The position numbers and the translations under genes are program-made. The notes under the pieces are model-generated. The model was not told where the DNA came from. It was given only the letters and a program-made list of their open reading frames with translations, and made no database searches. A stretch of 64,000 nt of DNA, from positions 186,001 to 250,000 of the IMG/VR virus record IMGVR_UViG_3300042879_006196; one strand, written 5' to 3'. Position 1 is the stretch's first letter, and each line of letters starts with the position of its first letter. Below are positions 8,850 to 58,891 of this stretch, in pieces.

Positions 8850-10695
8850 TTTCATTTATCCAAAAAAAAATAATGTTTTTAAAGCCTCGCAATATTCAAC
8901 CCAATCAGTGTTTAATGATTTGCCGAAGTATTCAATATCCGTATATGATGATGCAAATTTCATTTACAAAAGACAATCACAAAATGGAAATCAAATCCTT
9001 TCTAACATAATCTCAGATGATTTATTCCCTGATGATTCTAATCAAGAATCAAAAACAAGATACTTAACAGGCAGAGGCACAAATTCTAAAATATTTTATC
9101 TTAAAGTGCTTGTAAATAAACCTGTGCCACAAGACACTCCTGGAAACTATTCAACTATTTTTTATTTAGCTAAAACACAAATATTTGGCGCGGTTTCTAC
9201 AGTATATTATTCATTAAGATGTATTGAAAAGAATCAAAACTACACTGCTTACACATCAGTGATAACAATTAAAAAATCAGATTTTATTTCTCAATTTGAT
9301 GGAAAAATATTTCTTAATCTTGTTGGTGATTATGATGTTTCTGTAAAATTTCCAATTGATTTACAAATTAATAATTCAGCTTCTACTTCAATAAGCCAAA
9401 TAAGTAGTGCAACACCTCAAACTTTAAGCTCCACTACAAATAATTCAGCATATTTTCAGACATACCCAGTGAGCTTTTCTTACTACGAATATTCTGATAG
9501 TCAAGATTTTAATTTTACTTACACAAACTTAGTGCTTACAAATAGTTTATTTTCCACTGCTAACACAATAATTAATTCAAATGTAAGCACAGGTATCTCA
9601 CTTAGGTTTACTTTTTCAGGCGTATATAATATTTCTGACTTTAGTTATTTTGGCTTGACCATTCAAAATACCGATCCATCTTATAATCCCAACGTTGACA
9701 CAATCTTCAAAATTGTTTTTAGAACAGTGGAAGACGAAGTGATAAGTGTAGAAGATTGCTCTATCTTGAATAATCTTAATTCTGGATATTACAATGTAGT
9801 GTTCAAACTCAAAAATATAGACACAAATCTTAATAATCTAAATTACATGCTGATACAAATAATAAGCACAAGAACATTAACACAAAACTACAGTATTACA
9901 TATATCAATTTTATGACAGCTATCACTGCTGGTGCTTTTTCTGTAAAATCGCTGCAAAACAATACACAAGAGGAAAATTTTACTAAAGATCCATTCGATA
10001 AAATACAATATATTGATAATTTAAAAAATCAAGAATTAATTAAAAGCACTGCTTTATTTACCACTGTCGAAAGCTTAATTGAAATAGGGGATGAAGTAGT
10101 TTATGAAATAACAACACAATCTGGAAAAATTTATTTACCAGAAAATGCTATGATATTTACTAGCAATGATTTTTTACCAGCATATTCTTTGGAGCAAGAC
10201 GTTTTAATTTTAGAAAATGATTCTTTCATGCCTATCACTTCAATAAAAATAATGCCTCCAAGAAAAGTGAAAATGATAGATATTTATGAGAATGCTGATT
10301 ATATTTTGAATGGATTTTATGTTAAGAACCCACTGTTTATAAAAAGTTTTCAAAGAATTTTTCTTGAAAGAATTGAAACTAGAAAACAAAATAAAAGTTT
10401 TTCAATAAATGATGAAAAATACTTTTTATTAGAATCAGAAGATTTTCAATATTTTTCAAATGAAATTGTTTTGAAAAAAGGCAATCATATAATTGAGTTT
10501 TCTCCTTCGACAATTTATGCATCGATTTTAATTAGTGGTAATTCTGAAATTGTTGTTCAATCAAAAATTAAACAAAAAGTAGTGGGACAAAATCAAAAAT
10601 TGCAATTAGATATAGATAATAAAAATTTTTTAATATATCTAAAAAGTAATAGCACAATAACTATACACAAACTAATATGTAAACATGAGAGTTAA
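8833..10695 (+). CDS. Putative virion protein with degenerate Hint domain, ~620 aa (start uncertain)
   Basis: Long ORF; ~10030-10329 reads like a Hint domain (IGDEV..VYEITTQSG..YILNGFYVKN) lacking the catalytic Cys and block-B His; paralogous to the next ORF. Confidence 0.7.
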   Translation: MVVVVNFIYPKKNNVFKASQYSTQSVFNDLPKYSISVYDDANFIYKRQSQNGNQILSNIISDDLFPDDSNQESKTRYLTGRGTNSKIFYLKVLVNKPVPQDTPGNYSTIFYLAKTQIFGAVSTVYYSLRCIEKNQNYTAYTSVITIKKSDFISQFDGKIFLNLVGDYDVSVKFPIDLQINNSASTSISQISSATPQTLSSTTNNSAYFQTYPVSFSYYEYSDSQDFNFTYTNLVLTNSLFSTANTIINSNVSTGISLRFTFSGVYNISDFSYFGLTIQNTDPSYNPNVDTIFKIVFRTVEDEVISVEDCSILNNLNSGYYNVVFKLKNIDTNLNNLNYMLIQIISTRTLTQNYSITYINFMTAITAGAFSVKSLQNNTQEENFTKDPFDKIQYIDNLKNQELIKSTALFTTVESLIEIGDEVVYEITTQSGKIYLPENAMIFTSNDFLPAYSLEQDVLILENDSFMPITSIKIMPPRKVKMIDIYENADYILNGFYVKNPLFIKSFQRIFLERIETRKQNKSFSINDEKYFLLESEDFQYFSNEIVLKKGNHIIEFSPSTIYASILISGNSEIVVQSKIKQKVVGQNQKLQLDIDNKNFLIYLKSNSTITIHKLICKHES

Positions 10696-13600
10696 TTTTC
10701 AAGCAAACAAAAATGATGTCAATCTTCTGATTAATGATCAGATTGTGTGTTCGTTTGTTAATTCAAAAATTTTATCAGAAAATACCATTCAATCTGGTGA
10801 AATATCAATCACTTTTGATGTGTCTCAAAATATTATTAATTTCAATTTAGAAAGCAAAAATTTTGAAATTTTATCAATGAAATTTGATTCAATTAAACTT
10901 TTAAAATCAAACAGATACTATTGTGATTTTGGAAATTCTTTAATAGAAATAGATTGTGAAAAAGCTACTTTAATAGCCAATACAAATCTTGTGATAGGTT
11001 TTTCTGGATTTCATAAATTTTCTTACGAAGTAAAAGAGTCATTTTATACATCTAGCTACAGACAACTTTCAGCATCAAGCGATTTAGTTTACAGTAAAGA
11101 AGCCCCTAGTTTTTCAATTACATTTTATAGAGATTTTCAAAACAACAACTTTAGCACTTTGTTTGACTCTTATAAAGACATTCAAATATTGTCGCTTGCT
11201 AATGCAAACTCCACAGAACAACCAAATAGCGCAGTAATTTATGTCAAAATTATATCTTCGAAAATAGATACTTATCCTGCAGTTTCTTTTCCTTTAACAC
11301 CTCAACAGGCAAGCCCAGTTTACACTCTTGCTGTATATTCTGAATATTACACTAATAAAAATAATAAACGTGTTGTACCTATCTATAAACTTTATAACAC
11401 AAACGAAGGAAGTGTATATTTAGCTGAATTTACATTAGAAAATTCTAATTACATTAATTTATTTGATGGAACCAGGCAATTTTTTGTTGAAGTTACAAAG
11501 TTCATTTACAATGGTTATTTGAATGTGAAAACAGAAATTAACGGAGGAACTCAAACAACTTCACCACAATCTAGCATCACTTCTAGTTCATCTACATTAT
11601 CTAGTATTCCATCTCAAAATTGTTGTTTTCAGTTTTACACTGGCTCATTGCCATACTATACCGCAAACTGGAGCAATACAACCTACACTTATGATATAGG
11701 TCGTTTATTGTGTGATTTTTCAATTCCAGAAACAACCACTTATCAAAGCACAAGTTTTGCCACGTCTTCAAACACACTTTTCTATAATGGATCTAATTTT
11801 ATAGGCATCAATGCTAAATATGATTTTTCCAATTTTTCATATAAAAATTATGAATGGATTTCATTATTTTTTGTCTCTTTAGATGATTTAACTAACGCCA
11901 CTATTAATAAAAATCTTTACTATTTAGAGGTACTATATTATTATGTGGAAATAAATCAACCAGATAAATTTGTTTTTTGTATGGACGACGCAAATATAAT
12001 CAATTTTGGGTCAAACTATGGATTACAAGCTTTCTTTGATTTCAATAAATATCTCAGAAAAAATGCAGCTAGTCCAGTTACTTTAAAAACAATTGAAATA
12101 CAATTGCAAAAATCAACTAATGTATTTCCGAATGAGTTTAGGTTATATGATTTTAAGCTATTTACAATTTATTGTGGTGGTCTGCCTAAAAAATATGATA
12201 TTGCTGTTAATGCGTTTGATAAAAATAGCTTAGATGAATTAGAAGCTTTAATCACCAATAGTCCTGCAGATAACAATTTAAATTCTTCTGGGCTTACGCC
12301 TTTCACAAGAAATTTTAATAATGCAACTAATGCTTCATTTACGGCATCAAGCGGACTATGGAAAAACTTAACAGACGGAATTTCTAGAAATTACACATTT
12401 GAATATTGGGTACTCAACAATATTACAGATAACAAAATTTATCAAAACACTTACACAATTGGAGTAAATGCTGATTATATGCTAAGTGCATATTTTTCTT
12501 TGCAATCAGATTCTTCTAGTAGTTCATCTAGTAGCTCATGTGTAGTTTATGGAACAAAAATACACACATCAATAAATGAAACTATTAATGTTGAAAACTT
12601 GAAAGTTGGAGATTACGTATTAGGACTAAATGGTTCAAATAATTTTACAAAATATAAAATTACAAAAATTTCAGAATCTCACTCTGAGCAAATTTATAAA
12701 TTATCTTTTTCTAATAATACATTAGAGTGTTCTGAATCACATTGCGTATTTAGCCCATTAGATTCTGGTTTTAAACAATCGCTTGAACTTAACACAAACA
12801 AAATTTTAAAATGCATTGATAAAAATCATAAAATTGATACAATTGAAATTTTGCCACCTAAAAAAGTAGTGAAACTAGAATTACAAAACAATGGTTGTTA
12901 TTTTGCAAATGGTGTGTTATCTCATTCACAAGATAAACATCCAGATTTTGTTGCTTTTGCTAAAAATCAATATAGAGCGATGAGCAATACTTATGTTGAA
13001 TTTTTGAAATATGGAGATACAACCTGGATCCCACCAAGTGGAATTAATTATTTGAAAATTGAATGTATAGGTGCAGGAGGCTTTTCAAGTTCTACAGCTG
13101 GAGGCGATGGTGGAGACTACTCCATGATTGAGTTTAATAATATATTCCCTGAATTTCCTACATTTGCATCAATTACATTTACAATAGGAGAAAATCCTTA
13201 TGCAATTCCAACATCCTTTATAGCTACATGGGACATAGGTTCTGGTCTTAATCAGTTTTGGGTAGCAGCAAGTTCAGGAGGTGGTATTGGAGGAGATACT
13301 GGCTACTATGGAAGTCCGCCCAATTTAATGTCTTTAGCAAATGGCAAAAGACATTTTGGAGGAAAAGGGGCAACTTTAGATTCTGGCACAGGCTTAGGTG
13401 GGGGTGGCGCAGCTGGCAAAAATGGAAATGGTGAAAGCGGGGGAGATTCTGTTAACTTTAATACTTGGTGGGGTGGTGCTTCAGGGGGAGGAGCATCAAC
13501 TCAAACACAAAGACTTCCTGGAAATCCAGGTGTGGAATACACCGCAAATGCTGGAAAATATGCTGGAGAACAAGCAGGATCTGGTGGAGGCGGAGCAGGT

Positions 13601-14530
13601 CTAATTCAAGGATTATCTTATGGAGGACTTTATGGAGGGGGGCAAGGTAGTTATCCACCATCTGGAATTCCAACGCTAAGCTCATACGGGATCATAATCA
13701 TTACATATAGAATTGGAAGTGAATCTAGTAGCTCTTCATCAACTAAGTCTTCAACTAGCAGTTCAAGCACGTCTGGCTCTACAGGGTCTTCAACTTTTTC
13801 TACACCAAGTAGCTCATCTACAAGTGGCTCATCTACAAGTGGATCATCTACAAGCGGTTCATCTACAAGCGGTTCATCTACAAGCGGTTCATCCACAAGT
13901 AGTTCGCCTCCAAGTAGTTCTTCCAGCTCAAGCTCCGCAACCACGTCTAGTTCTAGTTCAAGTGAGACATCGGTTACATCCCCTAGCACACCTCCAAGCT
14001 CAACCACTAGTTCAGATACTGGATCTTCCACTACTTCAAGTGCAACCAGTAGCATAACAGATTCTGGTTCTGGTTCAATGCCGCCTCCATCTATTCTTGC
14101 ATTAAAATCTGAAAATCAAGTAATGTTTAGTGCTTCAAATAATTATCAAACGCTTTGGAAATATTTAATTTCAAGTGTTTGGAAAAAACCTTTACTTTTT
14201 TCAACCGCAAGCCTTGATTCATTTAATGGCTATGTGTTTGATAATGAATCAAAAATAATGTTCAAATTTATAATTGATATTGAAAGTTATACTGACATTA
14301 TAAACTTTGTTATTATATCTGAAAAAGACAACTTTAATATTGAAAATCAAAATTTCACAACAAAAGATACAATCTCAACAAACAACAAAAATGTAAAAAT
14401 TATATGTTGCCCAAAAAATCCAGAAATTATATTTACACTTCACTCAGAAGAGCCAAACACAATCTATGGTTTTTTTGCCTTGGATGATTCAGAATTAGAT
14501 TCATTCATACTAAATCTTCAAGGTAATTGA
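10685..14530 (+). CDS. Putative virion protein with Hint domain, glycine-rich domain and Ser/Thr-rich tract, 1281 aa
   Basis: Hint CVVYGT..LKVGDYV..CSESH..YFANGVLSHS at 12539-12928; then WIPPSGINYLKIECIGAGG..GGDGG, a glycine-rich domain typical of phage tail proteins; then SSTSG repeats. Confidence 0.8.
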   Translation: MRVNFQANKNDVNLLINDQIVCSFVNSKILSENTIQSGEISITFDVSQNIINFNLESKNFEILSMKFDSIKLLKSNRYYCDFGNSLIEIDCEKATLIANTNLVIGFSGFHKFSYEVKESFYTSSYRQLSASSDLVYSKEAPSFSITFYRDFQNNNFSTLFDSYKDIQILSLANANSTEQPNSAVIYVKIISSKIDTYPAVSFPLTPQQASPVYTLAVYSEYYTNKNNKRVVPIYKLYNTNEGSVYLAEFTLENSNYINLFDGTRQFFVEVTKFIYNGYLNVKTEINGGTQTTSPQSSITSSSSTLSSIPSQNCCFQFYTGSLPYYTANWSNTTYTYDIGRLLCDFSIPETTTYQSTSFATSSNTLFYNGSNFIGINAKYDFSNFSYKNYEWISLFFVSLDDLTNATINKNLYYLEVLYYYVEINQPDKFVFCMDDANIINFGSNYGLQAFFDFNKYLRKNAASPVTLKTIEIQLQKSTNVFPNEFRLYDFKLFTIYCGGLPKKYDIAVNAFDKNSLDELEALITNSPADNNLNSSGLTPFTRNFNNATNASFTASSGLWKNLTDGISRNYTFEYWVLNNITDNKIYQNTYTIGVNADYMLSAYFSLQSDSSSSSSSSSCVVYGTKIHTSINETINVENLKVGDYVLGLNGSNNFTKYKITKISESHSEQIYKLSFSNNTLECSESHCVFSPLDSGFKQSLELNTNKILKCIDKNHKIDTIEILPPKKVVKLELQNNGCYFANGVLSHSQDKHPDFVAFAKNQYRAMSNTYVEFLKYGDTTWIPPSGINYLKIECIGAGGFSSSTAGGDGGDYSMIEFNNIFPEFPTFASITFTIGENPYAIPTSFIATWDIGSGLNQFWVAASSGGGIGGDTGYYGSPPNLMSLANGKRHFGGKGATLDSGTGLGGGGAAGKNGNGESGGDSVNFNTWWGGASGGGASTQTQRLPGNPGVEYTANAGKYAGEQAGSGGGGAGLIQGLSYGGLYGGGQGSYPPSGIPTLSSYGIIIITYRIGSESSSSSSTKSSTSSSSTSGSTGSSTFSTPSSSSTSGSSTSGSSTSGSSTSGSSTSGSSTSSSPPSSSSSSSSATTSSSSSSETSVTSPSTPPSSTTSSDTGSSTTSSATSSITDSGSGSMPPPSILALKSENQVMFSASNNYQTLWKYLISSVWKKPLLFSTASLDSFNGYVFDNESKIMFKFIIDIESYTDIINFVIISEKDNFNIENQNFTTKDTISTNNKNVKIICCPKNPEIIFTLHSEEPNTIYGFFALDDSELDSFILNLQGN
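13814..13903 (+). repeat. Six tandem 15-bp repeats (consensus tcatctacaagYggN) encoding SSTSG
   Basis: Directly visible: tcatctacaagtggc / tcatctacaagtgga / tcatctacaagcggt x3 / tcatccacaagtagt. Confidence 0.95.
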
Positions 14531-40275: not shown

Positions 40276-41202
40276 ATGTCTAATCCAATTAAATTCATTC
40301 CAGATTTAAGAGATAAAATTTTAAATCAAGTTTCTATTCTGAATGAGCAACAGAATTGGGGGCTATCTTTTATTGAAGCTTCTTATGCTTGGCAACATTC
40401 AAAAGGAGAAGATGTAAAGGTGGCAATAATAGACACAGGATGGTTTCCTCACAAAGATTTACAAGTGAATTTTTTAGATGGGTATGATGCCACTGGCAAT
40501 AATGATTTTATGGATCATGGCTCATATCATGGCACACATGTGGCTGGAATAGTTGGTGCTAATTGTGGGCAAAATATTGGCGTAATGGGTGTTGCGCCAA
40601 GCTGTAAACTTATTCCCATAAAGGCACTTGATGATGATGGCACTGGTTCATTTGATTTCATTGCAAACGCTTTACAAATCGCACACGACTTAGATGTAGA
40701 TATAATCAATATGTCTCTTGGAACAGAATCCGATTATGGTCAAAGCAAAGTACATTCATTGATAAAAGATATAACAGCAAAGGGCAAGATTGTGGTTTGT
40801 GCTAGTGGGAATGATGGAGAAGATGTAAACTTTCCAGCAAAATATGATGAATCAATTGCTGTGGCAGCTGTTGAAAATGATGGAAAATTGGCTCGTTTTT
40901 CTTCGAGAGGTCCTGAGCTTGATGTTGCGGCACCTGGTGTAAAAATTTATTCTACTTGGGGAAACAATCAATATGTGAATCTTGATGGCACATCTATGGC
41001 TTGTCCAACTATTTCTGGAATAATTGCATTGATAATTTCTTGGTATAAAAAAAATCCAGACCCAAATTTTCAAATAAATTTCACGAACATGATCAAACTT
41101 ATGTATGATTTAGGTGGACCAGAAGGTGACCATATTGTACAACAAGGATCGTATAATATTGGAGTGCCTAAATTACAAAATTTTAATCCTTGGAAAAATT
41201 AA
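40276..41202 (+). CDS. S8 subtilisin-family serine protease (intracellular-subtilisin-like), 308 aa
   Basis: Catalytic triad motifs IIDTG, HGTHVAG, GTSMACP and oxyanion CASGN; no signal peptide; short N-terminal extension containing KFIPD. Confidence 0.95.
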   Translation: MSNPIKFIPDLRDKILNQVSILNEQQNWGLSFIEASYAWQHSKGEDVKVAIIDTGWFPHKDLQVNFLDGYDATGNNDFMDHGSYHGTHVAGIVGANCGQNIGVMGVAPSCKLIPIKALDDDGTGSFDFIANALQIAHDLDVDIINMSLGTESDYGQSKVHSLIKDITAKGKIVVCASGNDGEDVNFPAKYDESIAVAAVENDGKLARFSSRGPELDVAAPGVKIYSTWGNNQYVNLDGTSMACPTISGIIALIISWYKKNPDPNFQINFTNMIKLMYDLGGPEGDHIVQQGSYNIGVPKLQNFNPWKN

Positions 41203-41204
41203 CA

Positions 41205-41825
41205 ATGTCAGAAAAAGTAACAGATAGAATACAAGAAGTGATTGCACAATCTGTGCCTGCCTCATGCACTATATTTGTAAAAACAAGAAAACAATCTTGG
41301 TCAGGAAGCGGCTTTCACATAGGAAATGGCTATGTTGTTACTGCTTCACATGTTGCACCTGAAGAATTAATGTCCAGTGGAGACGTAAAAGTAACTTTTG
41401 ATGGTTCATTATTATTGGATTGTTCAGTTTTCAAATCAGATCCTAATATAGACGCGGCTATTTTAAAAATTGAATCAGATTGGTCAAATATTCCTTCTGT
41501 AGTTTTAGCAAACTCAGACGCTGTTGAATTGGGTGAAACTGTTGCAGTTATAGGCGCGCCAGAAATGTTTCATGACACAGTAACGGTTGGAAGAGTAAGC
41601 AATACAGATCAATCACTAGGAGATGCCGCCCCATCTCCAGCTTGGAATAATATAATGTTTGTTGATGCAAAAATCATACAAGGAGTAAGCGGCGGAATGT
41701 GCGTTGGCACAGATGGTCTTGTAATTGGTTCAGTAATTGGAGTCACAGGGATGCTTGCAGAATATGGTGTAGGTGAGAATGTTATTTGTCCTTCCAATAA
41801 AATAATTAATCTTTTGAAAAGTTAA
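41205..41825 (+). CDS. Trypsin-like (S1, HtrA-type protease domain) serine protease without PDZ
   Basis: GSGFHI..VVTASHV, DAAILK, GVSGG. ATG at 41205 preferred over the track's TTG at 41190 because it follows the S8 stop. Confidence 0.9.
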   Translation: MSEKVTDRIQEVIAQSVPASCTIFVKTRKQSWSGSGFHIGNGYVVTASHVAPEELMSSGDVKVTFDGSLLLDCSVFKSDPNIDAAILKIESDWSNIPSVVLANSDAVELGETVAVIGAPEMFHDTVTVGRVSNTDQSLGDAAPSPAWNNIMFVDAKIIQGVSGGMCVGTDGLVIGSVIGVTGMLAEYGVGENVICPSNKIINLLKS

Positions 41826-41829
41826 TTAG

Positions 41830-41835
41830 TATAAT
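41830..41835 (+). promoter_or_regulatory. TATAAT -10 box 6 nt upstream of the dnaJ ATG (candidate leaderless promoter)
   Basis: tagTATAATatctatATG; no Shine-Dalgarno is present. Confidence 0.5.
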
Positions 41836-41841
41836 ATCTAT

Positions 41842-42798
41842 ATGGATTATTATTCAATACTTGAATTAGATAGAACGGCGTCTCCCGAAGATATCAAAAA
41901 ATCTTACAGAAAACTAGCAAAACAATATCATCCAGATGTAAACCCCAACGATCCAATATCTGAGGAAAAATTTAAACAAGTAAGTGAAGCATATGAAGTT
42001 CTTTCAGATGAACAAAAAAAACACAACTATGATACTTATGGTAATGTAAATGGTGGGGGTTTTACTGATTTTGGTTTCAATATCAATTTTGATCCTGGTT
42101 CAATATTTGAAGAATTTTTTGGACCCAGGAGGCAACCTGAAAGAAATACTGATCTGCAAATTGAATTGCAATTACAATTAAAGGATTTTGTTAAAGGCTG
42201 CGTTCATACTGTCAAAATCAATAAAAGAAAAAAATGCCTTGATTGTGACGGATTAGGGGGATTTGATTTCAATGCATGCCCTGACTGCAATGGCTCTGGC
42301 ATGATTCAACATTCCAGTTTTAACCATATGTTTTTTGTTCAAACATCTCCTTGTGGCAGATGTAGTGCCAAGGGCAAAATTCCACAAAGACAATGTGATA
42401 AATGTAACGTTACTGGATTCATTAATTACGTTTCAGAAATTAATATCAATATTCCTGAAAATTGTCCAATATTTGCTACTTTACAACTTCAAGGTCAAGG
42501 TAATCAAGAAAAAAATAATTTACCTCCTGGAAATTTGTTTGTAAGACTTGTTCCAGTCTCAAACGGCTTTGAAGTAGATCATGAGGGCAACGTTAAGTTG
42601 ATCAAAGAAATTAATTTGCAAAATTGGGTAAATAACGAAGAAATTTCAATTGATAGATTTGGAATAGAAGCATTCAAATTTTCATTGTATAATTTAAGTA
42701 GCTCTGATAGTCAAATCAAATTTGATGGGATGGGCGCAAAGAATGCAAATAACAGCCGCCAAGGTGACTTTATAGTAGCATTCAGAATAACTAAATAA
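41842..42798 (+). CDS. dnaJ: DnaJ (class A) co-chaperone, 318 aa
   Basis: J-domain with HPD (KQYHPDVN), short G/F region, four Cys repeats ([32 protein letters not shown]) and C-terminal domain ([13 protein letters not shown]). Confidence 0.95.
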
Positions 42799-45061: not shown

Positions 45062-46687
45062 ATGGGAATATTTATTGGCTGTGATTTAGGCACAACAAAT
45101 TCTGTTGTTTGCTTTAAAAATTCAAAAAATGAATTTGAATTTGTTAAAGATGAATCAGGAAACAAACTTATTCCATCTGTAGTTTGCTATGCTGATGAGC
45201 TATATGTTGGTAGAGAAGCGGTTGAAAATGAAGAAAATTTTCCTGAAAAAACTATAAGATCTTCTAAAAGATTTATTGGTAATAATAATTCTGATTATGA
45301 CGCAACAGAAGTTGCCAAGCATATCTTAGAGTATTTAAAAAGCATAACAGAATCTCACTCAAAAGAAGCAATTGAAGGCTTAGTAATCACTGTGCCAGCT
45401 TATTTTAATCAAAATCAAAGATTAGAAACTAAAAAAGCTGCTGAACTAGCTGGTTTTAAAGTCTTAAGAATTATTAATGAGCCTACCGCTGCCGCCTTAG
45501 CATACGGGGAAGACACTAACTTAAATGAACTTGTTCTTGTGTACGATTTGGGAGGTGGCACTTTCGATGTAACACTGTTACAGTTATCTGATGATAAAGT
45601 TTATCAGGTGTTAGCGACTTCAGGAAATACAAAACTTGGAGGAGATGATTTTGATAATTTGTTAGTAAATTACATTATTGGCGAGATACCACATCATTTC
45701 AATGAATTTAAAGATTTTCAAGTTAGGCTTAAAAAATTTGCCGAAGAAATAAAAATACAATTAAATTATAAATCTAAGGTGAGCAAAACTTTAAAATATT
45801 GTGGATTATTACATGGTAAACTTTATCATCACAAAGTAGAAATATTAAAAGAAGATTATGAAAAAATGATTCATCCTCTATTACTCAAAACAAAATCTCA
45901 TGTTTTGACAGCTTTAAACGATGCAGACAAAAAAATATCTAATTTGTCTAAAATTATTTTAGTTGGTGGCTCAACAAAATCAAAAATTGTTAGAGAATTT
46001 GTTGAAAAAGAATTTAACACAAAAGTCTTTTATGAAATTGACCCAGATTTAACTGTGAGCGCTGGAGCTGCAAATTTAGCTCACTCTATCGCCGTTAAAA
46101 ACGCTGACAGTGCCATTCTTGTAGATGTCACTCCACTATCACTTGGAATTGAAACTAAAGGGGGATTGTTGAATAAAATTATTCCTAGAAATACGAATGT
46201 ACCAGTAAGTGCTGCGCAAGACTTTATAACAGCAGAAGATAACCAAGAATCTGTGAATATCAAAATTTATCAAGGTGAAAGACCTCTTGCCAAAGATAAT
46301 GAGTTTCTTGGTGAGTTTGTGTTAAGTGGATTTGAAAAACGACCAAAAGGGCAAACAAAAATTGTTGTTAAGTTTGATATTGATGCATCGGGTTTAATTA
46401 CTGTCACTGCTTTTGATAAAATTTCAGGCTTACAGTCTGAAGTCACGTTAAAATCCTTGACTTCAGAAAAAACAAATGAGTTGCTTGATAATATTGAAGC
46501 AAGCTTACATGATGACAAAAAAATACTAGAAAAAATTGAATTAGAAGAATTAAGACAAGAAGCAAAAACTCTTATGCTAACACAAAGTATATTAAATAAA
46601 GATGAAGATTTAGAATCCACTTATGATGCTGTAAAAGATAATCTTGTTGCCCTAAAAGTTTTCATACAATCGTTAAACAATGCATAA
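45062..46687 (+). CDS. dnaK: Hsp70/DnaK chaperone (short form), 541 aa
   Basis: GCDLGTTNS, IINEPTAAALAYG, YDLGGGTFDV, ILVGGST, linker VDVTPLSLGIE and substrate-binding DNQ..V.I.IYQGER. Confidence 0.95.
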   Translation: MGIFIGCDLGTTNSVVCFKNSKNEFEFVKDESGNKLIPSVVCYADELYVGREAVENEENFPEKTIRSSKRFIGNNNSDYDATEVAKHILEYLKSITESHSKEAIEGLVITVPAYFNQNQRLETKKAAELAGFKVLRIINEPTAAALAYGEDTNLNELVLVYDLGGGTFDVTLLQLSDDKVYQVLATSGNTKLGGDDFDNLLVNYIIGEIPHHFNEFKDFQVRLKKFAEEIKIQLNYKSKVSKTLKYCGLLHGKLYHHKVEILKEDYEKMIHPLLLKTKSHVLTALNDADKKISNLSKIILVGGSTKSKIVREFVEKEFNTKVFYEIDPDLTVSAGAANLAHSIAVKNADSAILVDVTPLSLGIETKGGLLNKIIPRNTNVPVSAAQDFITAEDNQESVNIKIYQGERPLAKDNEFLGEFVLSGFEKRPKGQTKIVVKFDIDASGLITVTAFDKISGLQSEVTLKSLTSEKTNELLDNIEASLHDDKKILEKIELEELRQEAKTLMLTQSILNKDEDLESTYDAVKDNLVALKVFIQSLNNA

Positions 46688-57451: not shown

Positions 57452-58891
57452 ATGAGAAAAAAAGACTCTAAAACTGAAAATTGTACTATTTGTGCAGCTC
57501 CTGTAGATCCATCCAACGCATTTGTGTTTTATTTTAACAATCAAGAACACTTTTTCTGTGAATCTCATGAAAGACCATTCAAAATGGGCATTGATATTGG
57601 TCAAATAGAAATGAACTCAAAGTTTATATCTTTTATCTCTGATTTACCAGACCCTACCCCTAAAAATGAATTAAAATCTGCATTAAGGCAATTCATTCCT
57701 ATGACAAAAATGCAAGATCCAGAATTCAAGGAAAAAGAAAATTTTATATTATCTACAAAAATTTCTAGCCCCAAACAACTGTTCGATGAAATAGGTAAAA
57801 CAGTAATTGGTCAAGATGAGGCTAGAAAAACTATTTCAGTTTCTGTAATCAACCATTTACAATTGCTAAACCAAGATGTGGAGCAAGTTACACAATCTGA
57901 CAAGCATCATGTTTTAATGCTTGGCAAGTCAGGTTCAGGTAAAACTTTAATTGCAAATACTGTTGCAAATCTTTTCAATTTACCATTTGCCGTAGGAGAT
58001 GCTACAAATTACTCCCCTACTGGTTTTCAAGGATCTGATGCAGAGTCTATCATACATGATCTTTTGTTTAAAGCAGATATGAATTTTGATTTAGCCGAGA
58101 GAGGGATTGCATTTATTGATGAAATTGACAAAATTTGTAGTTCAAATAAATCTTCTGGAAGGTATGAATCTTTTATTGGATCAACACAATCCACTCTATT
58201 GAAACTAGTAGAAGGCAAAACTATTAAAGTACCAAGCACAGTCTTGGGTGATGGACCTGGAGCGCCATATGACTGCAGCTCGGAAAGAGTGTTGTTCTTC
58301 TTAGGTGGCGCCTTTAATGGCTTATCAGAAATTCTTGCCAAAAAGATGGGAATGAAAGAAAGGTCTGTTGGATTTATCAAAACACATGATGAAAAAAGTA
58401 AAGATATTGATGAAGCAATGAAGTCATATGAAATTTTTTCACAAGCTTCGCGTGAGGATATGGTAGAGTCTTTAATTGAATTTGGAATGCTTTCCGAACT
58501 AGTAGGAAGAATTCCATCGATAGTTGCTCTTAAGCCCTTGAGCAAAGAAGATTTAACAAAAGTTTTAGTTGAGTCCACTGTATCTCCGTTAGAAAAACAA
58601 AAGTATATTTTTGAAAAATCTGGTTATAAATTGGAATTCACTGAAGAATTCATCAAAGCAACTGTAGAAAAATCTTACAAATCAGCTGTTGGCACCAGGG
58701 CTCTTGATTCATATGTCAAAAAAGCTGTTAGCGCCGCTAGTTTTGATTTATTGTCTTTGATTAATGTGTCTGGGTCAAAAGGCACAGTACTTATCACAGA
58801 TGAGTGTTTAACAAACCCTGCCGCTTATCAAACTAGTAAAATTCTTGTTGCCAGCAGTCCTGTGTCTTTTCAAAATTCATTAACCATCTAA
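57452..58891 (+). CDS. clpX: ClpX-family AAA+ unfoldase, 479 aa
   Basis: VIGQDEARKTISVSVINH, Walker A GKSGSGKT, DAT..S.TGFQGSDAE, Walker B IAFIDEIDKI, QSTLLKLVEG, GGAFNGL, FGMLSELVGRIP, GTRAL; N-terminal Zn finger. Confidence 0.9.
   Translation: MRKKDSKTENCTICAAPVDPSNAFVFYFNNQEHFFCESHERPFKMGIDIGQIEMNSKFISFISDLPDPTPKNELKSALRQFIPMTKMQDPEFKEKENFILSTKISSPKQLFDEIGKTVIGQDEARKTISVSVINHLQLLNQDVEQVTQSDKHHVLMLGKSGSGKTLIANTVANLFNLPFAVGDATNYSPTGFQGSDAESIIHDLLFKADMNFDLAERGIAFIDEIDKICSSNKSSGRYESFIGSTQSTLLKLVEGKTIKVPSTVLGDGPGAPYDCSSERVLFFLGGAFNGLSEILAKKMGMKERSVGFIKTHDEKSKDIDEAMKSYEIFSQASREDMVESLIEFGMLSELVGRIPSIVALKPLSKEDLTKVLVESTVSPLEKQKYIFEKSGYKLEFTEEFIKATVEKSYKSAVGTRALDSYVKKAVSAASFDLLSLINVSGSKGTVLITDECLTNPAAYQTSKILVASSPVSFQNSLTI

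What the first reader, a model, noticed from the sequence alone, without database searches (positions are those of the whole stretch)
12539..12928. Apparently intact internal Hint domain in a virion-type protein, configured for N-terminal cleavage rather than splicing
Seen: a Ser run is followed directly by Cys619 (CVVYGT), then block B SESH and a C-terminal YFANGVLSHS ending His-Ser instead of His-Asn. No endonuclease is present, and a glycine-rich tail domain, an SSTSG tract and a terminal domain follow. Established: Hedgehog and bacterial intein-like Hint domains perform an N-S acyl shift at the first Cys, and C-terminal cleavage or splicing needs the terminal Asn. Inference: the protein self-cleaves at Ser618/Cys619 into two virion chains, or the thioester ligates the N-fragment to another nucleophile (another virion protein or a small molecule).
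Basis: partly seen in the sequence, partly recalled or inferred. Interest (0 to 1): 0.72.

Follow-up and report, generated by a model that had tools for sequence, protein, structure and literature searches.

The report
Hint self-cleavage domain in phage protein
A 1,281-residue protein of an uncultured 347-kb phage contains a genuine intein-like (Hint/BIL) domain that keeps the residues for breaking the bond in front of it but has lost those for cutting behind it, so it most likely splits the protein in two instead of splicing; the domain type is known, but this Asn-less phage clade is a new variant.

Summary
ORF 10685-14530 (+) encodes 1,281 aa. Cys619 follows a nine-Ser run, the true block B is S683-E-S-H686, and the domain ends in G-V-L-S-H-S748, with Gln at +1.

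Pfam alone is weak, but an exhaustive search found 103 relatives, all matching through residues ~609-759. A profile of these relatives hits solved bacterial intein-like (BIL) domains at 1e-32. The AF2 model (pLDDT 92) superposes on BIL and mini-intein structures at TM 0.8.

The domain belongs to a well-supported clade (99/96) that retains Cys1, block-B Ser/His and the penultimate His. That clade has replaced all three residues tied to C-terminal cleavage (terminal Asn to Ser/Thr, F-block His to Gly, F:4 Asn/Asp) and has Gln/Glu at +1.

A syntenic orthologue at ~40% identity keeps the domain, as do both other homologues of the N-terminal module. It always sits after a low-complexity linker.

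The best reading is an N-S acyl shift at Ser618-Cys619 followed by N-terminal cleavage into fragments of about 70 and 69 kDa, with no splicing. Thioester transfer to another nucleophile is not excluded.

Cleavage and virion location are untested. I rate it a new variant of a known kind.

The parts
10685..14530 (+). Whole ORF, 1,281 aa (139.5 kDa), P0001. Its start overlaps the end of the upstream 620-aa ORF by 11 bases.
   Evidence: Between two haplotypes there are 35 synonymous and 17 non-synonymous differences. The gene order is conserved in a related phage contig, L016.
10685..12484 (+). N-terminal module (residues 1-600). It has no family assignment. Homologous modules occur in P0107 (38% identity) and P0005 (34% identity).
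   Evidence: The atlas look-alikes (InlB B-repeat / lectin-like, score 0.86) are leads only.
12512..12538 (+). Nine-Ser linker (S610-S618) ending at the predicted scissile bond Ser618|Cys619.
   Evidence: Relatives have poly-S, (SPSPSS)n, (TP)n or (SAP)n linkers at the same place.
12539..12928 (+). Hint (BIL-type) domain, residues 619-748, mini-intein size, no endonuclease.
   Evidence: Family profile versus PDB: 2LWY 1.5e-32, 6TMM/6Y75 1e-31. AF2 pLDDT 92.3. Foldseek TM 0.78-0.82 to BIL domains. The query scores 152 bits against a profile built without it.
12539..12541 (+). Cys619 = position 1 of the Hint domain (block A, C-V-V-Y-G-T), the predicted nucleophile of the N-S acyl shift.
   Evidence: Cys in 91 of 98 aligned domains and in 12 of 12 leading copies of the clade.
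12731..12742 (+). Block B, S683-E-S-H686 ([TS]-x-x-H), flanked by clade-typical Cys682 and Cys687.
   Evidence: His in 93 of 98 and Thr/Ser in 96 of 98 aligned domains. Cys682 and His686 are invariant in the 12 leading copies. Clade-specific Cys687.
12893..12928 (+). Blocks F/G, G737-C-Y-F-A-N-G-V-L-S-H747-S748. The F-block His is replaced by Gly, the penultimate His is kept, and the terminal Asn is replaced by Ser.
12929..12952 (+). Post-Hint motif Q749-D-K-H-P-D-F-V (Gln at +1, no nucleophile). It is partly conserved in the clade as Q/E-x-x-H-P-x-F/Y.
   Evidence: It is absent from the syntenic orthologue P0107.
13013..13651 (+). Glycine-rich domain (Gly_rich_2, PF21722), residues 777-989.
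   Evidence: 20.3 bits on the whole protein, below the 24.3 cut-off; 24.0 bits, or 24.7 with neighbouring matches in the frame, in the genome search. Atlas look-alikes are 81-95% viral. It is absent from the orthologue P0107 and lies N-terminal to the Hint domain in P0010.
13652..14089 (+). Ser/Thr-rich low-complexity tract (residues 990-1135) including (S-S-T-S-G)n, encoded by a 15-bp tandem repeat at 13806-13920.
14090..14527 (+). Conserved C-terminal domain (residues 1136-1281) with an L-W-K-Y...W-K-K motif, predicted to be a beta-sandwich plus a terminal helix.
   Evidence: Shared with P0107, P0003, P0004, P0006, P0008, P0011 and P0019. AF2 pLDDT 75. Only generic CBM-like matches, best Z 6.8.

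Best explanation
Residues 619-748 are a bacterial-intein-like (BIL) Hint domain. It belongs to a distinct clade that has kept the first half of the intein reaction and dismantled the second. After folding, Cys619 attacks the Ser618 carbonyl in an N-S acyl shift, helped by block-B Ser683/His686. This turns the Ser618-Cys619 peptide bond into a thioester. There is no +1 nucleophile (Gln749), no terminal Asn (Ser748) and no F-block His (Gly737), so neither transesterification onto the C-flank nor succinimide-driven C-terminal cleavage can follow. The thioester is therefore resolved by water or a thiol. That splits the 139.5-kDa precursor into an N-fragment (1-618, 70.3 kDa) and a C-fragment (619-1281, 69.2 kDa) that starts with Cys and carries the Hint domain, the glycine-rich domain, the Ser/Thr tract and the conserved C-terminal beta-sandwich. 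Shown here: the fold, the family, the residue pattern, its conservation and the modular architecture. Inferred: that the acyl shift and cleavage actually happen, and that the protein is a virion or host-interaction component.
For: (1) Family and fold. An exhaustive phmmer search gave 103 hits, all through residues ~609-759. 81 of the 98 aligned domains match Pfam Intein_splicing and 77 of 98 match PT-HINT. The family profile hits the C. thermocellum BIL domain 2LWY at 1.5e-32 and T. thermophila BIL2 at 1e-31. The AF2 model has pLDDT 92.3 and TM 0.78-0.82 to these structures.
(2) Step-1 residues are kept. Cys1, block-B His and the penultimate His are invariant in the 12 leading copies of the clade, and block-B Ser is nearly so.
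(3) Step-3 residues are lost together. In the clade, G:7 is Asn in only 2 of 16, compared with 78 of 82 elsewhere. F:13 is Gly in 15 of 16, while His is commonest elsewhere (50 of 82). F:4 Asn/Asp is replaced. The +1 residue is Gln or Glu.
(4) The clade is monophyletic, with support 99/96. Ser748 is encoded by TCA, which by the standard code table (my inference) is at least two base changes from either Asn codon.
(5) There is an internal contrast within the clade. Trailing extra copies in relatives (P0003 d2 and d3, P0004 d3, P0006 d3, P0019) have lost Cys1 and/or the block-B His. This shows what relaxed constraint looks like here.
(6) The domain is a constant part of the gene. All three known homologues of the N-module carry it, including a syntenic orthologue. 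In that orthologue the Hint domain is 43% identical and the N-module 38% identical.
(7) It always follows a flexible low-complexity linker.
(8) Literature. BIL domains lack a +1 nucleophile and give mainly cleaved products (PMC7664689, PMC7765530). HINT peptidases release modules of polymorphic toxins (PMC3482391).
Against: There is no experimental evidence of cleavage and no proteomics for this uncultured phage. The query alone is below Pfam thresholds (Intein_splicing E 0.011). F:4 is Lys in the query, and the role of this position in step 1 differs between inteins, so the rate could be low. Conservation of Cys1 and His could in principle serve metal binding or a redox switch, since the clade has extra conserved Cys682 and Cys687. 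Virion membership is not shown. If the C-fragment is released, the glycine-rich domain goes with it, which is awkward for a simple 'discarded assembly module' picture.
Confidence: 0.55

Rival explanations
1. Thioester-driven conjugation. The Cys619 thioester is not simply hydrolysed. Instead the 70-kDa N-fragment is passed to another nucleophile, such as a Lys of another phage protein (isopeptide), a small molecule or a host-surface amine or hydroxyl. This would resemble Hedgehog cholesteroylation or the ATP-independent ubiquitin-like conjugation by Tetrahymena BIL2.
For: The best structural matches are BIL2 of the T. thermophila BUBL1 locus. That domain forms isopeptide bonds to Lys of other proteins (PMC8616854). 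Loss of the C-terminal cleavage residues with retention of step 1 is also the Hedgehog pattern (PMC7664689). The clade has its own conserved additions (Cys687, Gln at +1, a partly conserved H-P motif) of unknown role.
Against: No acceptor is identified. There is no sterol-recognition-like adaptor. The post-Hint motif is absent from the syntenic orthologue P0107, and Lys751 is not conserved. Hydrolysis is the default fate in BIL domains (PMC7664689).
Confidence: 0.15
2. Catalytically silent Hint fold. The domain no longer reacts and serves as a structural spacer or interaction module between the N-terminal module and the C-terminal modules.
For: Degenerate Hint copies without Cys1 or His persist in relatives, so the fold can be kept without chemistry. 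F:4 is Lys and the query is below Pfam thresholds.
Against: The query and all 12 leading copies keep exactly Cys1, block-B Ser/His and the penultimate His, whereas the trailing copies lose them. The Hint domain is at least as conserved as the flanks between orthologues.
Confidence: 0.2
3. Stalled branched intermediate. Ser748 (Ser, Thr or Cys in the clade, which is the set of canonical +1 nucleophiles) accepts the acyl group from Cys619. This would give an ester-branched protein that cannot resolve without Asn and either persists or hydrolyses slowly.
For: The terminal position in the clade is Ser (10), Thr (2), Asn (2) and Gly (1) of the 16 counted, and Cys in P0006 d2.
Against: Alignment places Ser748 exactly at the Asn position, with Gln conserved after it in both His-Asn and His-Ser copies of the clade. 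So this is a substitution, not a shifted +1 residue. No such chemistry is documented for this position.
Confidence: 0.05
4. A true intein that splices itself out and joins residues 618 and 749.
For: It has the Hint fold, Cys1, block B, a penultimate His and mini-intein size.
Against: There is no terminal Asn, Gln or Asp and no +1 Cys, Ser or Thr. It sits in a low-complexity linker between shuffled modules, not in a conserved site of a housekeeping protein. No intein-less homologue exists among the three known. What follows the Hint domain differs between relatives.
Confidence: 0.02

Closest known systems
A-type bacterial intein-like (BIL) domains (e.g. C. thermocellum BIL, PDB 2LWY; T. thermophila BUBL1 BIL2, PDB 6Y75/6TMM)
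   Same: These are the closest in sequence profile (1e-32 and 1e-31) and in structure (TM 0.78-0.82). They share Cys1, block B [TS]-x-x-H and a penultimate His. They lack a +1 nucleophile and lie in variable regions of non-conserved modular proteins, often in several copies (PMC7765530).
   Different: A-type BILs end in His-Asn and can cleave their C-terminus. This clade ends in His-Ser/Thr, has Gly instead of the F-block His, has lost F:4 Asn/Asp, and has Cys instead of Pro after the block-B His. The host is a 347-kb phage, not a bacterial secreted protein.
Hedgehog (Hog) Hint domain (PDB 1AT0)
   Same: It has the Hint fold (TM 0.74). It uses only the N-S acyl shift, with no Asn cyclisation, and the thioester is resolved by an external nucleophile (PMC7664689).
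   Different: It is much more distant in sequence (family profile 9e-8, compared with 1e-32 for BIL). No sterol-recognition region follows the Hint domain here.
Pretoxin HINT (PF07591) autopeptidase of polymorphic toxins
   Same: 77 of the 98 related domains match PF07591. The Hint domain sits between a long N-terminal stalk and C-terminal modules and is proposed to release modules by autoproteolysis (PMC3482391).
   Different: The query itself does not reach PF07591. Here the C-terminal domain is the conserved part and the N-terminal parts vary, which is the reverse of polymorphic toxins. No toxin or immunity pair is seen.
Class 1 mini-inteins (gp41-1, Ssp/Npu DnaB, Mtu RecA)
   Same: They share the fold, size, Cys1, block B and penultimate His.
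   Different: This domain has no terminal Asn, no +1 nucleophile, is not inserted in a conserved host-protein site, and has no intein-free allele.
C-terminal self-cleaving modules of phage fibres and spikes (S74 intramolecular chaperone)
   Same: The logic may be the same: a cassette (Hint plus the 'LWKY' beta-sandwich) is shared by proteins with different N-terminal parts and sits behind a self-cleavage site. S74 is described in PMC7824862.
   Different: The fold and chemistry are unrelated (Ser-Lys dyad versus Cys thioester). A chaperone role for the cassette is pure inference.

Membership tests
HINT superfamily | Hint (horseshoe, all-beta) fold | tested here: met
   The AF2 model has pLDDT 92.3. 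Foldseek gives TM 0.80-0.82 to BIL2, 0.78 to 2LWY, 0.74-0.78 to mini-inteins and 0.74 to Hedgehog 1AT0, all with probability 1.00.
HINT superfamily | Block A nucleophile (Cys/Ser at position 1) and block B [TS]-x-x-H | tested here: met
   Cys619, and S683-E-S-H686. The aligned columns hold Cys in 91/98, Thr/Ser in 96/98 and His in 93/98.
A-type BIL domain | Sequence relationship to BIL domains | tested here: met
   The family profile's top PDB hits are 2LWY (1.5e-32) and BIL2 (1e-31), ahead of all inteins. The query scores 152 bits to the family profile built without it.
A-type BIL domain | Conserved C-terminal His-Asn (PMC7765530) | tested here: not met
   The query ends His747-Ser748. In its clade the terminal residue is Ser (10), Thr (2), Asn (2) and Gly (1) of the 16 counted, compared with Asn in 78/82 of the other relatives.
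A-type BIL domain | No Cys/Ser/Thr at +1; located in variable regions of non-conserved proteins | tested here: met
   The +1 residue is Gln749. The flanking modules are shuffled among relatives.
B-type BIL domain | Own sequence motifs; shares the intein motifs except the C-terminal one (PMC7765530) | not tested
   No B-type BIL profile or reference sequence was available in the tools. The lack of the C-terminal Asn motif is shared, but the tree places this clade among A-type-like His-Asn domains.
Canonical class 1 intein | Terminal Asn (rarely Gln/Asp) and a +1 Cys/Ser/Thr allowing splicing | tested here: not met
   Ser748 and Gln749.
Canonical class 1 intein | Insertion in a conserved site of a host protein that also exists without it | tested here: not met
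   It lies after a poly-Ser linker between modules. All three known homologues of the N-module carry the Hint domain. The downstream modules differ among relatives.
Class 3 intein | No position-1 nucleophile; W-C-T motif with a Cys nucleophile at F:4 | tested here: not met
   Cys1 is present. F:4 is Lys730 in the query and Ser/Gly/Thr in the clade.
Hedgehog-type Hint | Followed by a sterol/adduct-recognition region that recruits the nucleophile | tested here: inconclusive
   What follows is a short, partly conserved Q-x-x-H-P-x-F motif and then Gly_rich_2.
Pretoxin HINT (PF07591) | Pfam gathering score | tested here: inconclusive
   The query has no PF07591 match at E <= 1, yet 77 of the 98 aligned domains match it.

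The most novel reading that the evidence does not exclude
The Asn-less Hint clade is a phage-encoded, ATP-independent protein-conjugation device. In this reading the Cys619 thioester transfers the 70-kDa N-module covalently onto a lysine or other nucleophile. The acceptor could be another phage particle protein or a host-surface molecule. The chemistry would match the isopeptide-forming Tetrahymena BIL2, its closest structural match.
Probability: 0.12. Interest if true: 0.85.

Novelty: new variant of a known kind. Interest (0 to 1): 0.5.

Why it matters
Hint domains that use only the first step of the intein reaction are known from Hedgehog proteins and, in part, from bacterial BIL domains. 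In phages, Hint domains have mostly been discussed as selfish inteins in replication and packaging genes. Here the Hint domain is a fixed, conserved part of a modular giant-ORF cluster of a huge phage. It forms a clade whose residue pattern predicts N-terminal cleavage only.

If that prediction is confirmed, it adds a thioester-based self-processing step to the ways phages mature or release large modular proteins, alongside S74 chaperone domains and prohead proteases. It would also provide a natural Asn-free, N-cleaving mini-Hint of 130 residues, which could be of use for thioester generation in protein chemistry. The prediction is simple and directly testable with one recombinant construct and one point mutant.

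Tried and rejected
- Pfam and PHROGs on the query alone gave only sub-threshold Hint hits and phrog_4474 of unknown function. An exhaustive search was needed.
- Word-index homologue searches over 590-1010 and 1-560 were swamped by low-complexity words. Region 617-760 recovered P0005 and the orthologue P0107.
- tblastn against 50,697 phage records found no match.
- The first viral-contig scan with the single protein found nothing. The scan with clade alignment A3 found only His-Asn-type BILs and ordinary inteins, with no further His-Ser-type member.
- A weak phmmer match of the Hint domain to the upstream 620-aa ORF (18.5 bits) was not confirmed by the family profile, which finds only two Hint domains in the genome. 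I rejected it as chance.
- P0003 seemed to start three residues before Cys1, which would have argued against a cleavage role. Its frame is open upstream through (SAP)n/(TP)n to the contig edge, so the start is a gene-calling artefact.
- The class 3 intein reading is rejected.
- Horizontal acquisition judged from composition is rejected. GC3 of the Hint domain is 0.13, within the 0.11-0.25 range of the rest of the ORF.
- Attempts to place the ORF in a virion module failed. PHROGs on nine neighbouring or nearby ORFs gave nothing. Pfam Baseplate_J, Phage_sheath_1, Terminase_6C and Phage_capsid gave no hit in the genome. Only a Phage_tube_2 match lies about 35 kb away on the other strand.
- The C-terminal domain gave no convincing structural relative: Foldseek E >= 4e-3 and VIA best Z 6.8.
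- The Gly-rich and N-terminal modules have no PDB sequence relatives.
- Read laying and complex prediction were not used, because neither bears on a post-translational cleavage.
Full report
**Setting**

The window is bases 186001-250000 of a 347,392-bp IMG/VR virus record estimated to be 99% complete. GC content is about 32%. The window encodes a run of very large ORFs on the + strand:
- 1,102 aa
- 1,681 aa with NHL repeats
- 620 aa
- the 1,281-aa target
- 4,138 aa with RCC1-like repeats
- 1,339 aa
- 3,069 aa

After these come an S8 subtilase, a trypsin-like protease, DnaJ, a UvsW-like helicase, Hsp70 and RNase HII. A tail-tube-like protein and PhoH lie on the other strand. This is a huge, very divergent phage. 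PHROGs and Pfam hallmark searches (baseplate J, sheath, terminase, capsid) found nothing.

**The observation**

ORF 10685-14530 (+) gives 1,281 residues.
- Cys619 (TGT, 12539-12541) follows nine serines and starts the string C-V-V-Y-G-T.
- The domain ends G-V-L-S-H-S748 (12926-12928), followed by Q-D-K-H-P.
- The string S-E-S-H occurs twice. Alignment shows that the second copy (S683...H686) is block B.

**Is it a Hint domain?**

Pfam on the query alone is sub-threshold (Intein_splicing E 0.011). An exhaustive phmmer search of 1.84 billion representatives with residues 590-1010 returned 103 proteins at E <= 1e-3. All of them match through residues ~609-759 and none through the glycine-rich part.

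I aligned 97 of their domains with the query (alignment A1). The results were:
- 81 of the 98 aligned domains match Intein_splicing, 77 match PT-HINT and 60 match Hint.
- The A1 profile hits the C. thermocellum BIL domain 2LWY at 1.5e-32 and T. thermophila BIL2 at 1e-31. Mini-inteins and Hedgehog follow.
- A profile built without the query scores the query at 152 bits over residues 612-754.
- AlphaFold2 with A1 gives an all-beta model with pLDDT 92.3.
- The best Foldseek matches of that model are BIL2 (TM 0.80-0.82), 2LWY (0.78/0.85), mini-inteins (0.70-0.78) and Hedgehog 1AT0 (0.74).

The fold and superfamily are therefore settled. The nearest described kind is the A-type BIL domain.

**A distinct clade**

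In the wider family the C-terminus is His-Asn (80 of 98) and +1 is usually Lys. Domains often stand in tandem with spacers of a few residues.

The query's nearest relatives (P0003-P0011, P0019, P0107) form one side of a branch with support 99/96. They share a coherent set of changes:
- terminal Asn replaced by Ser or Thr (Cys in one copy)
- F-block His replaced by Gly (15 of 16)
- F:4 Asn/Asp replaced by Ser, Gly, Thr or Lys
- Pro after the block-B His replaced by Cys
- block-B Thr replaced by Ser
- +1 Lys replaced by Gln or Glu

In the 12 'leading' copies of the clade, Cys1, the block-B His and the penultimate His are invariant, and block-B Ser is nearly so. So the residues for the N-S acyl shift are kept, and the three residues associated with Asn cyclisation are all gone.

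Extra, trailing copies in some relatives have lost Cys1 and/or the block-B His. They serve as an internal picture of what relaxed constraint looks like in this clade. Two basal trailing copies still end in His-Asn followed by Gln. This shows that Ser748 is a substitution at the Asn position and not a shifted +1 residue.

**Architecture and orthology**

P0107 (1,021 aa) lies on a 59-kb ENA contig with the same gene order as the window: about 1,075 aa, 71 aa, 1,687 aa with NHL, 599 aa, P0107, then 3,997 aa.
- Its N-module is 38% identical to the query's.
- A (SPSPSS)n linker then leads to a Hint domain that is 43% identical, with C-V-V-P-G-T, S-E-S-H-C and an ending of V-H-S followed by Q.
- The C-terminal 'LWKY...WKK' domain follows directly. 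There is no glycine-rich domain and no Ser/Thr tract.

P0005 has the N-module (34% identity) followed by two Hint domains, ending His-Thr and His-Ser. P0010 has a glycine-rich region, a Pro/Ser linker and then the Hint domain. P0003, P0004, P0006, P0008, P0011 and P0019 end with one to three Hint domains plus the same C-terminal domain.

All three known homologues of the N-module carry the Hint domain. The domain is therefore a fixed junction element between shuffled modules and always follows a low-complexity linker. It is not an intein parasitising a conserved site.

Other points support a real, native gene:
- GC3 of the Hint domain (0.13) is like the rest of the ORF.
- Between two haplotypes the ORF shows 35 synonymous and 17 non-synonymous differences.

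**Mechanism**

It is established that Cys1, with block B, makes the thioester, and that BIL domains without a +1 nucleophile give mainly cleaved products (PMC7664689, PMC7765530). Asn cyclisation is what cleaves the C-terminal junction (PMC8616854).

With Ser748, Gly737 and Gln749, steps 2 and 3 are not available. The expected outcome is N-terminal cleavage at Ser618|Cys619 into fragments of 70.3 and 69.2 kDa. I rate this at 0.55.

The rivals are:
- transfer of the thioester to another nucleophile, as in BIL2 isopeptide formation (PMC8616854) or Hedgehog: 0.15
- a silent structural fold: 0.20
- a stalled branched ester on Ser748: 0.05
- true splicing: 0.02

**What the fragments are**

The glycine-rich domain's look-alikes are 81-95% viral. 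Glycine-rich domains form receptor-binding tips of some tail fibres (PMC9608196), but no sequence link to those structures was found.

The C-terminal domain is predicted to be a beta-sandwich with a terminal helix (pLDDT 75). It has only generic carbohydrate-binding-module-like matches, with best Z 6.8. The N-module has only weak lectin-like or InlB-repeat look-alikes.

A host-interaction or virion role is plausible but unproven.

**Comparison and novelty**

The domain works like a Hedgehog-type or N-cleaving BIL Hint domain. By sequence it sits inside the A-type-BIL-like radiation, but it fails that family's defining His-Asn test. It also fails the tests for a canonical intein and for a class 3 intein. 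B-type BIL membership could not be tested.

Hint domains of the His-Asn type do occur in other phage contigs, as tandem C-terminal arrays in cyanomyovirus-like contigs. No other His-Ser-type member was found there.

I rate this as a new variant of a known kind, with interest 0.5.

Noticed in passing
outside the window: G000:C1:264311-264718 (+), locus L011 1063-2016: There is a second Hint domain in the same phage, in a 317-aa ORF. It has Ser instead of Cys at position 1 (S|F-A-E-G-T-Q-I), block B T-F-N-H, and ends F-A-V-H-N followed by Val. It groups with His-Asn-type BILs and not with the target's clade. The upstream ORF looks fibre-like.
   Followed up: partly
window 12353-13063 (codons 557-793 of the ORF): The window's allele and the allele on four metagenome contigs (L012-L015) differ at 52-53 bases across the ORF. 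They show no difference at all over 237 codons centred on the Hint domain. The chance of such a gap is about 0.0014. This could reflect a recent recombination or sweep of this segment, or nucleotide-level constraint. It is unexplained.
   Followed up: partly
loci L017, L018, L021, L027, L036 (also L019, L028, L033, L035), e.g. L021 8639-11371: IMG/VR phage contigs carry 740-925-aa ORFs that end in two or three tandem His-Asn-type BIL domains. The spacers are two residues long and the stop codon comes one residue after the last His-Asn. Weak degenerate Hint-like segments precede them. The L021 neighbourhood is cyanomyovirus-like (carbamoyltransferase, PhyH, 2OG-Fe(II) oxygenase). These look like self-removing C-terminal arrays.
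   Followed up: partly
proteins P0013, P0027, P0066, P0067, P0072, P0093 (metagenomic): These proteins have arrays of three to four complete BIL domains joined by spacers such as K-G-G-G-G between His-Asn and the next Cys. If all are active they would cut the protein into free Hint domains and tiny peptides. Their purpose is unknown.
   Followed up: no
proteins P0003 (158-307, 320-469), P0004 (~297-454), P0006 (301-448), P0019: These are trailing Hint copies that have lost Cys1 and/or the block-B His. Two of them still end in His-Asn. Within one protein there may be a division of labour between an N-cleaving copy and a C-cleaving copy.
   Followed up: no
window 12728-12730, 12743-12745, 12896-12898 (Cys682, Cys687, Cys738): These are clade-specific conserved cysteines flanking the block-B His and in block F. 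Cys682 is invariant in leading copies and Cys687 replaces the usual Pro. They could form a redox switch or metal site controlling the reaction.
   Followed up: no
window 40276-42798, 45062-46687, 57452-58891: The phage encodes its own S8 subtilase, a trypsin-like protease, DnaJ, Hsp70 and a ClpX-like AAA ATPase just downstream of the giant-ORF cluster. This is a possible folding and processing toolkit for those giant proteins.
   Followed up: no
window 13806-13920; ORFs 13651-14055 (-) and 13713-14057 (+): A 15-bp tandem repeat (7.7 copies) encodes (S-S-T-S-G)n. The two short ORFs listed over it are most likely artefacts of the low-complexity sequence.
   Followed up: partly
window 10685-10695: The target ORF's ATG overlaps the end of the upstream 620-aa ORF by 11 bases. 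The same tight arrangement is seen in the related contig L016 (8205-10004 and 10001-13066), which suggests coupled expression.
   Followed up: no
locus L026 (IMG/VR contig, 6,444 bases), open frame 2-2707: This is a terminase-like ORF. Two Hint C-terminal segments were detected, each with a nucleophile at +1 (His-Asn|Ser and His-Asn|Cys). They are ordinary inteins and serve as a useful contrast to the target.
   Followed up: no
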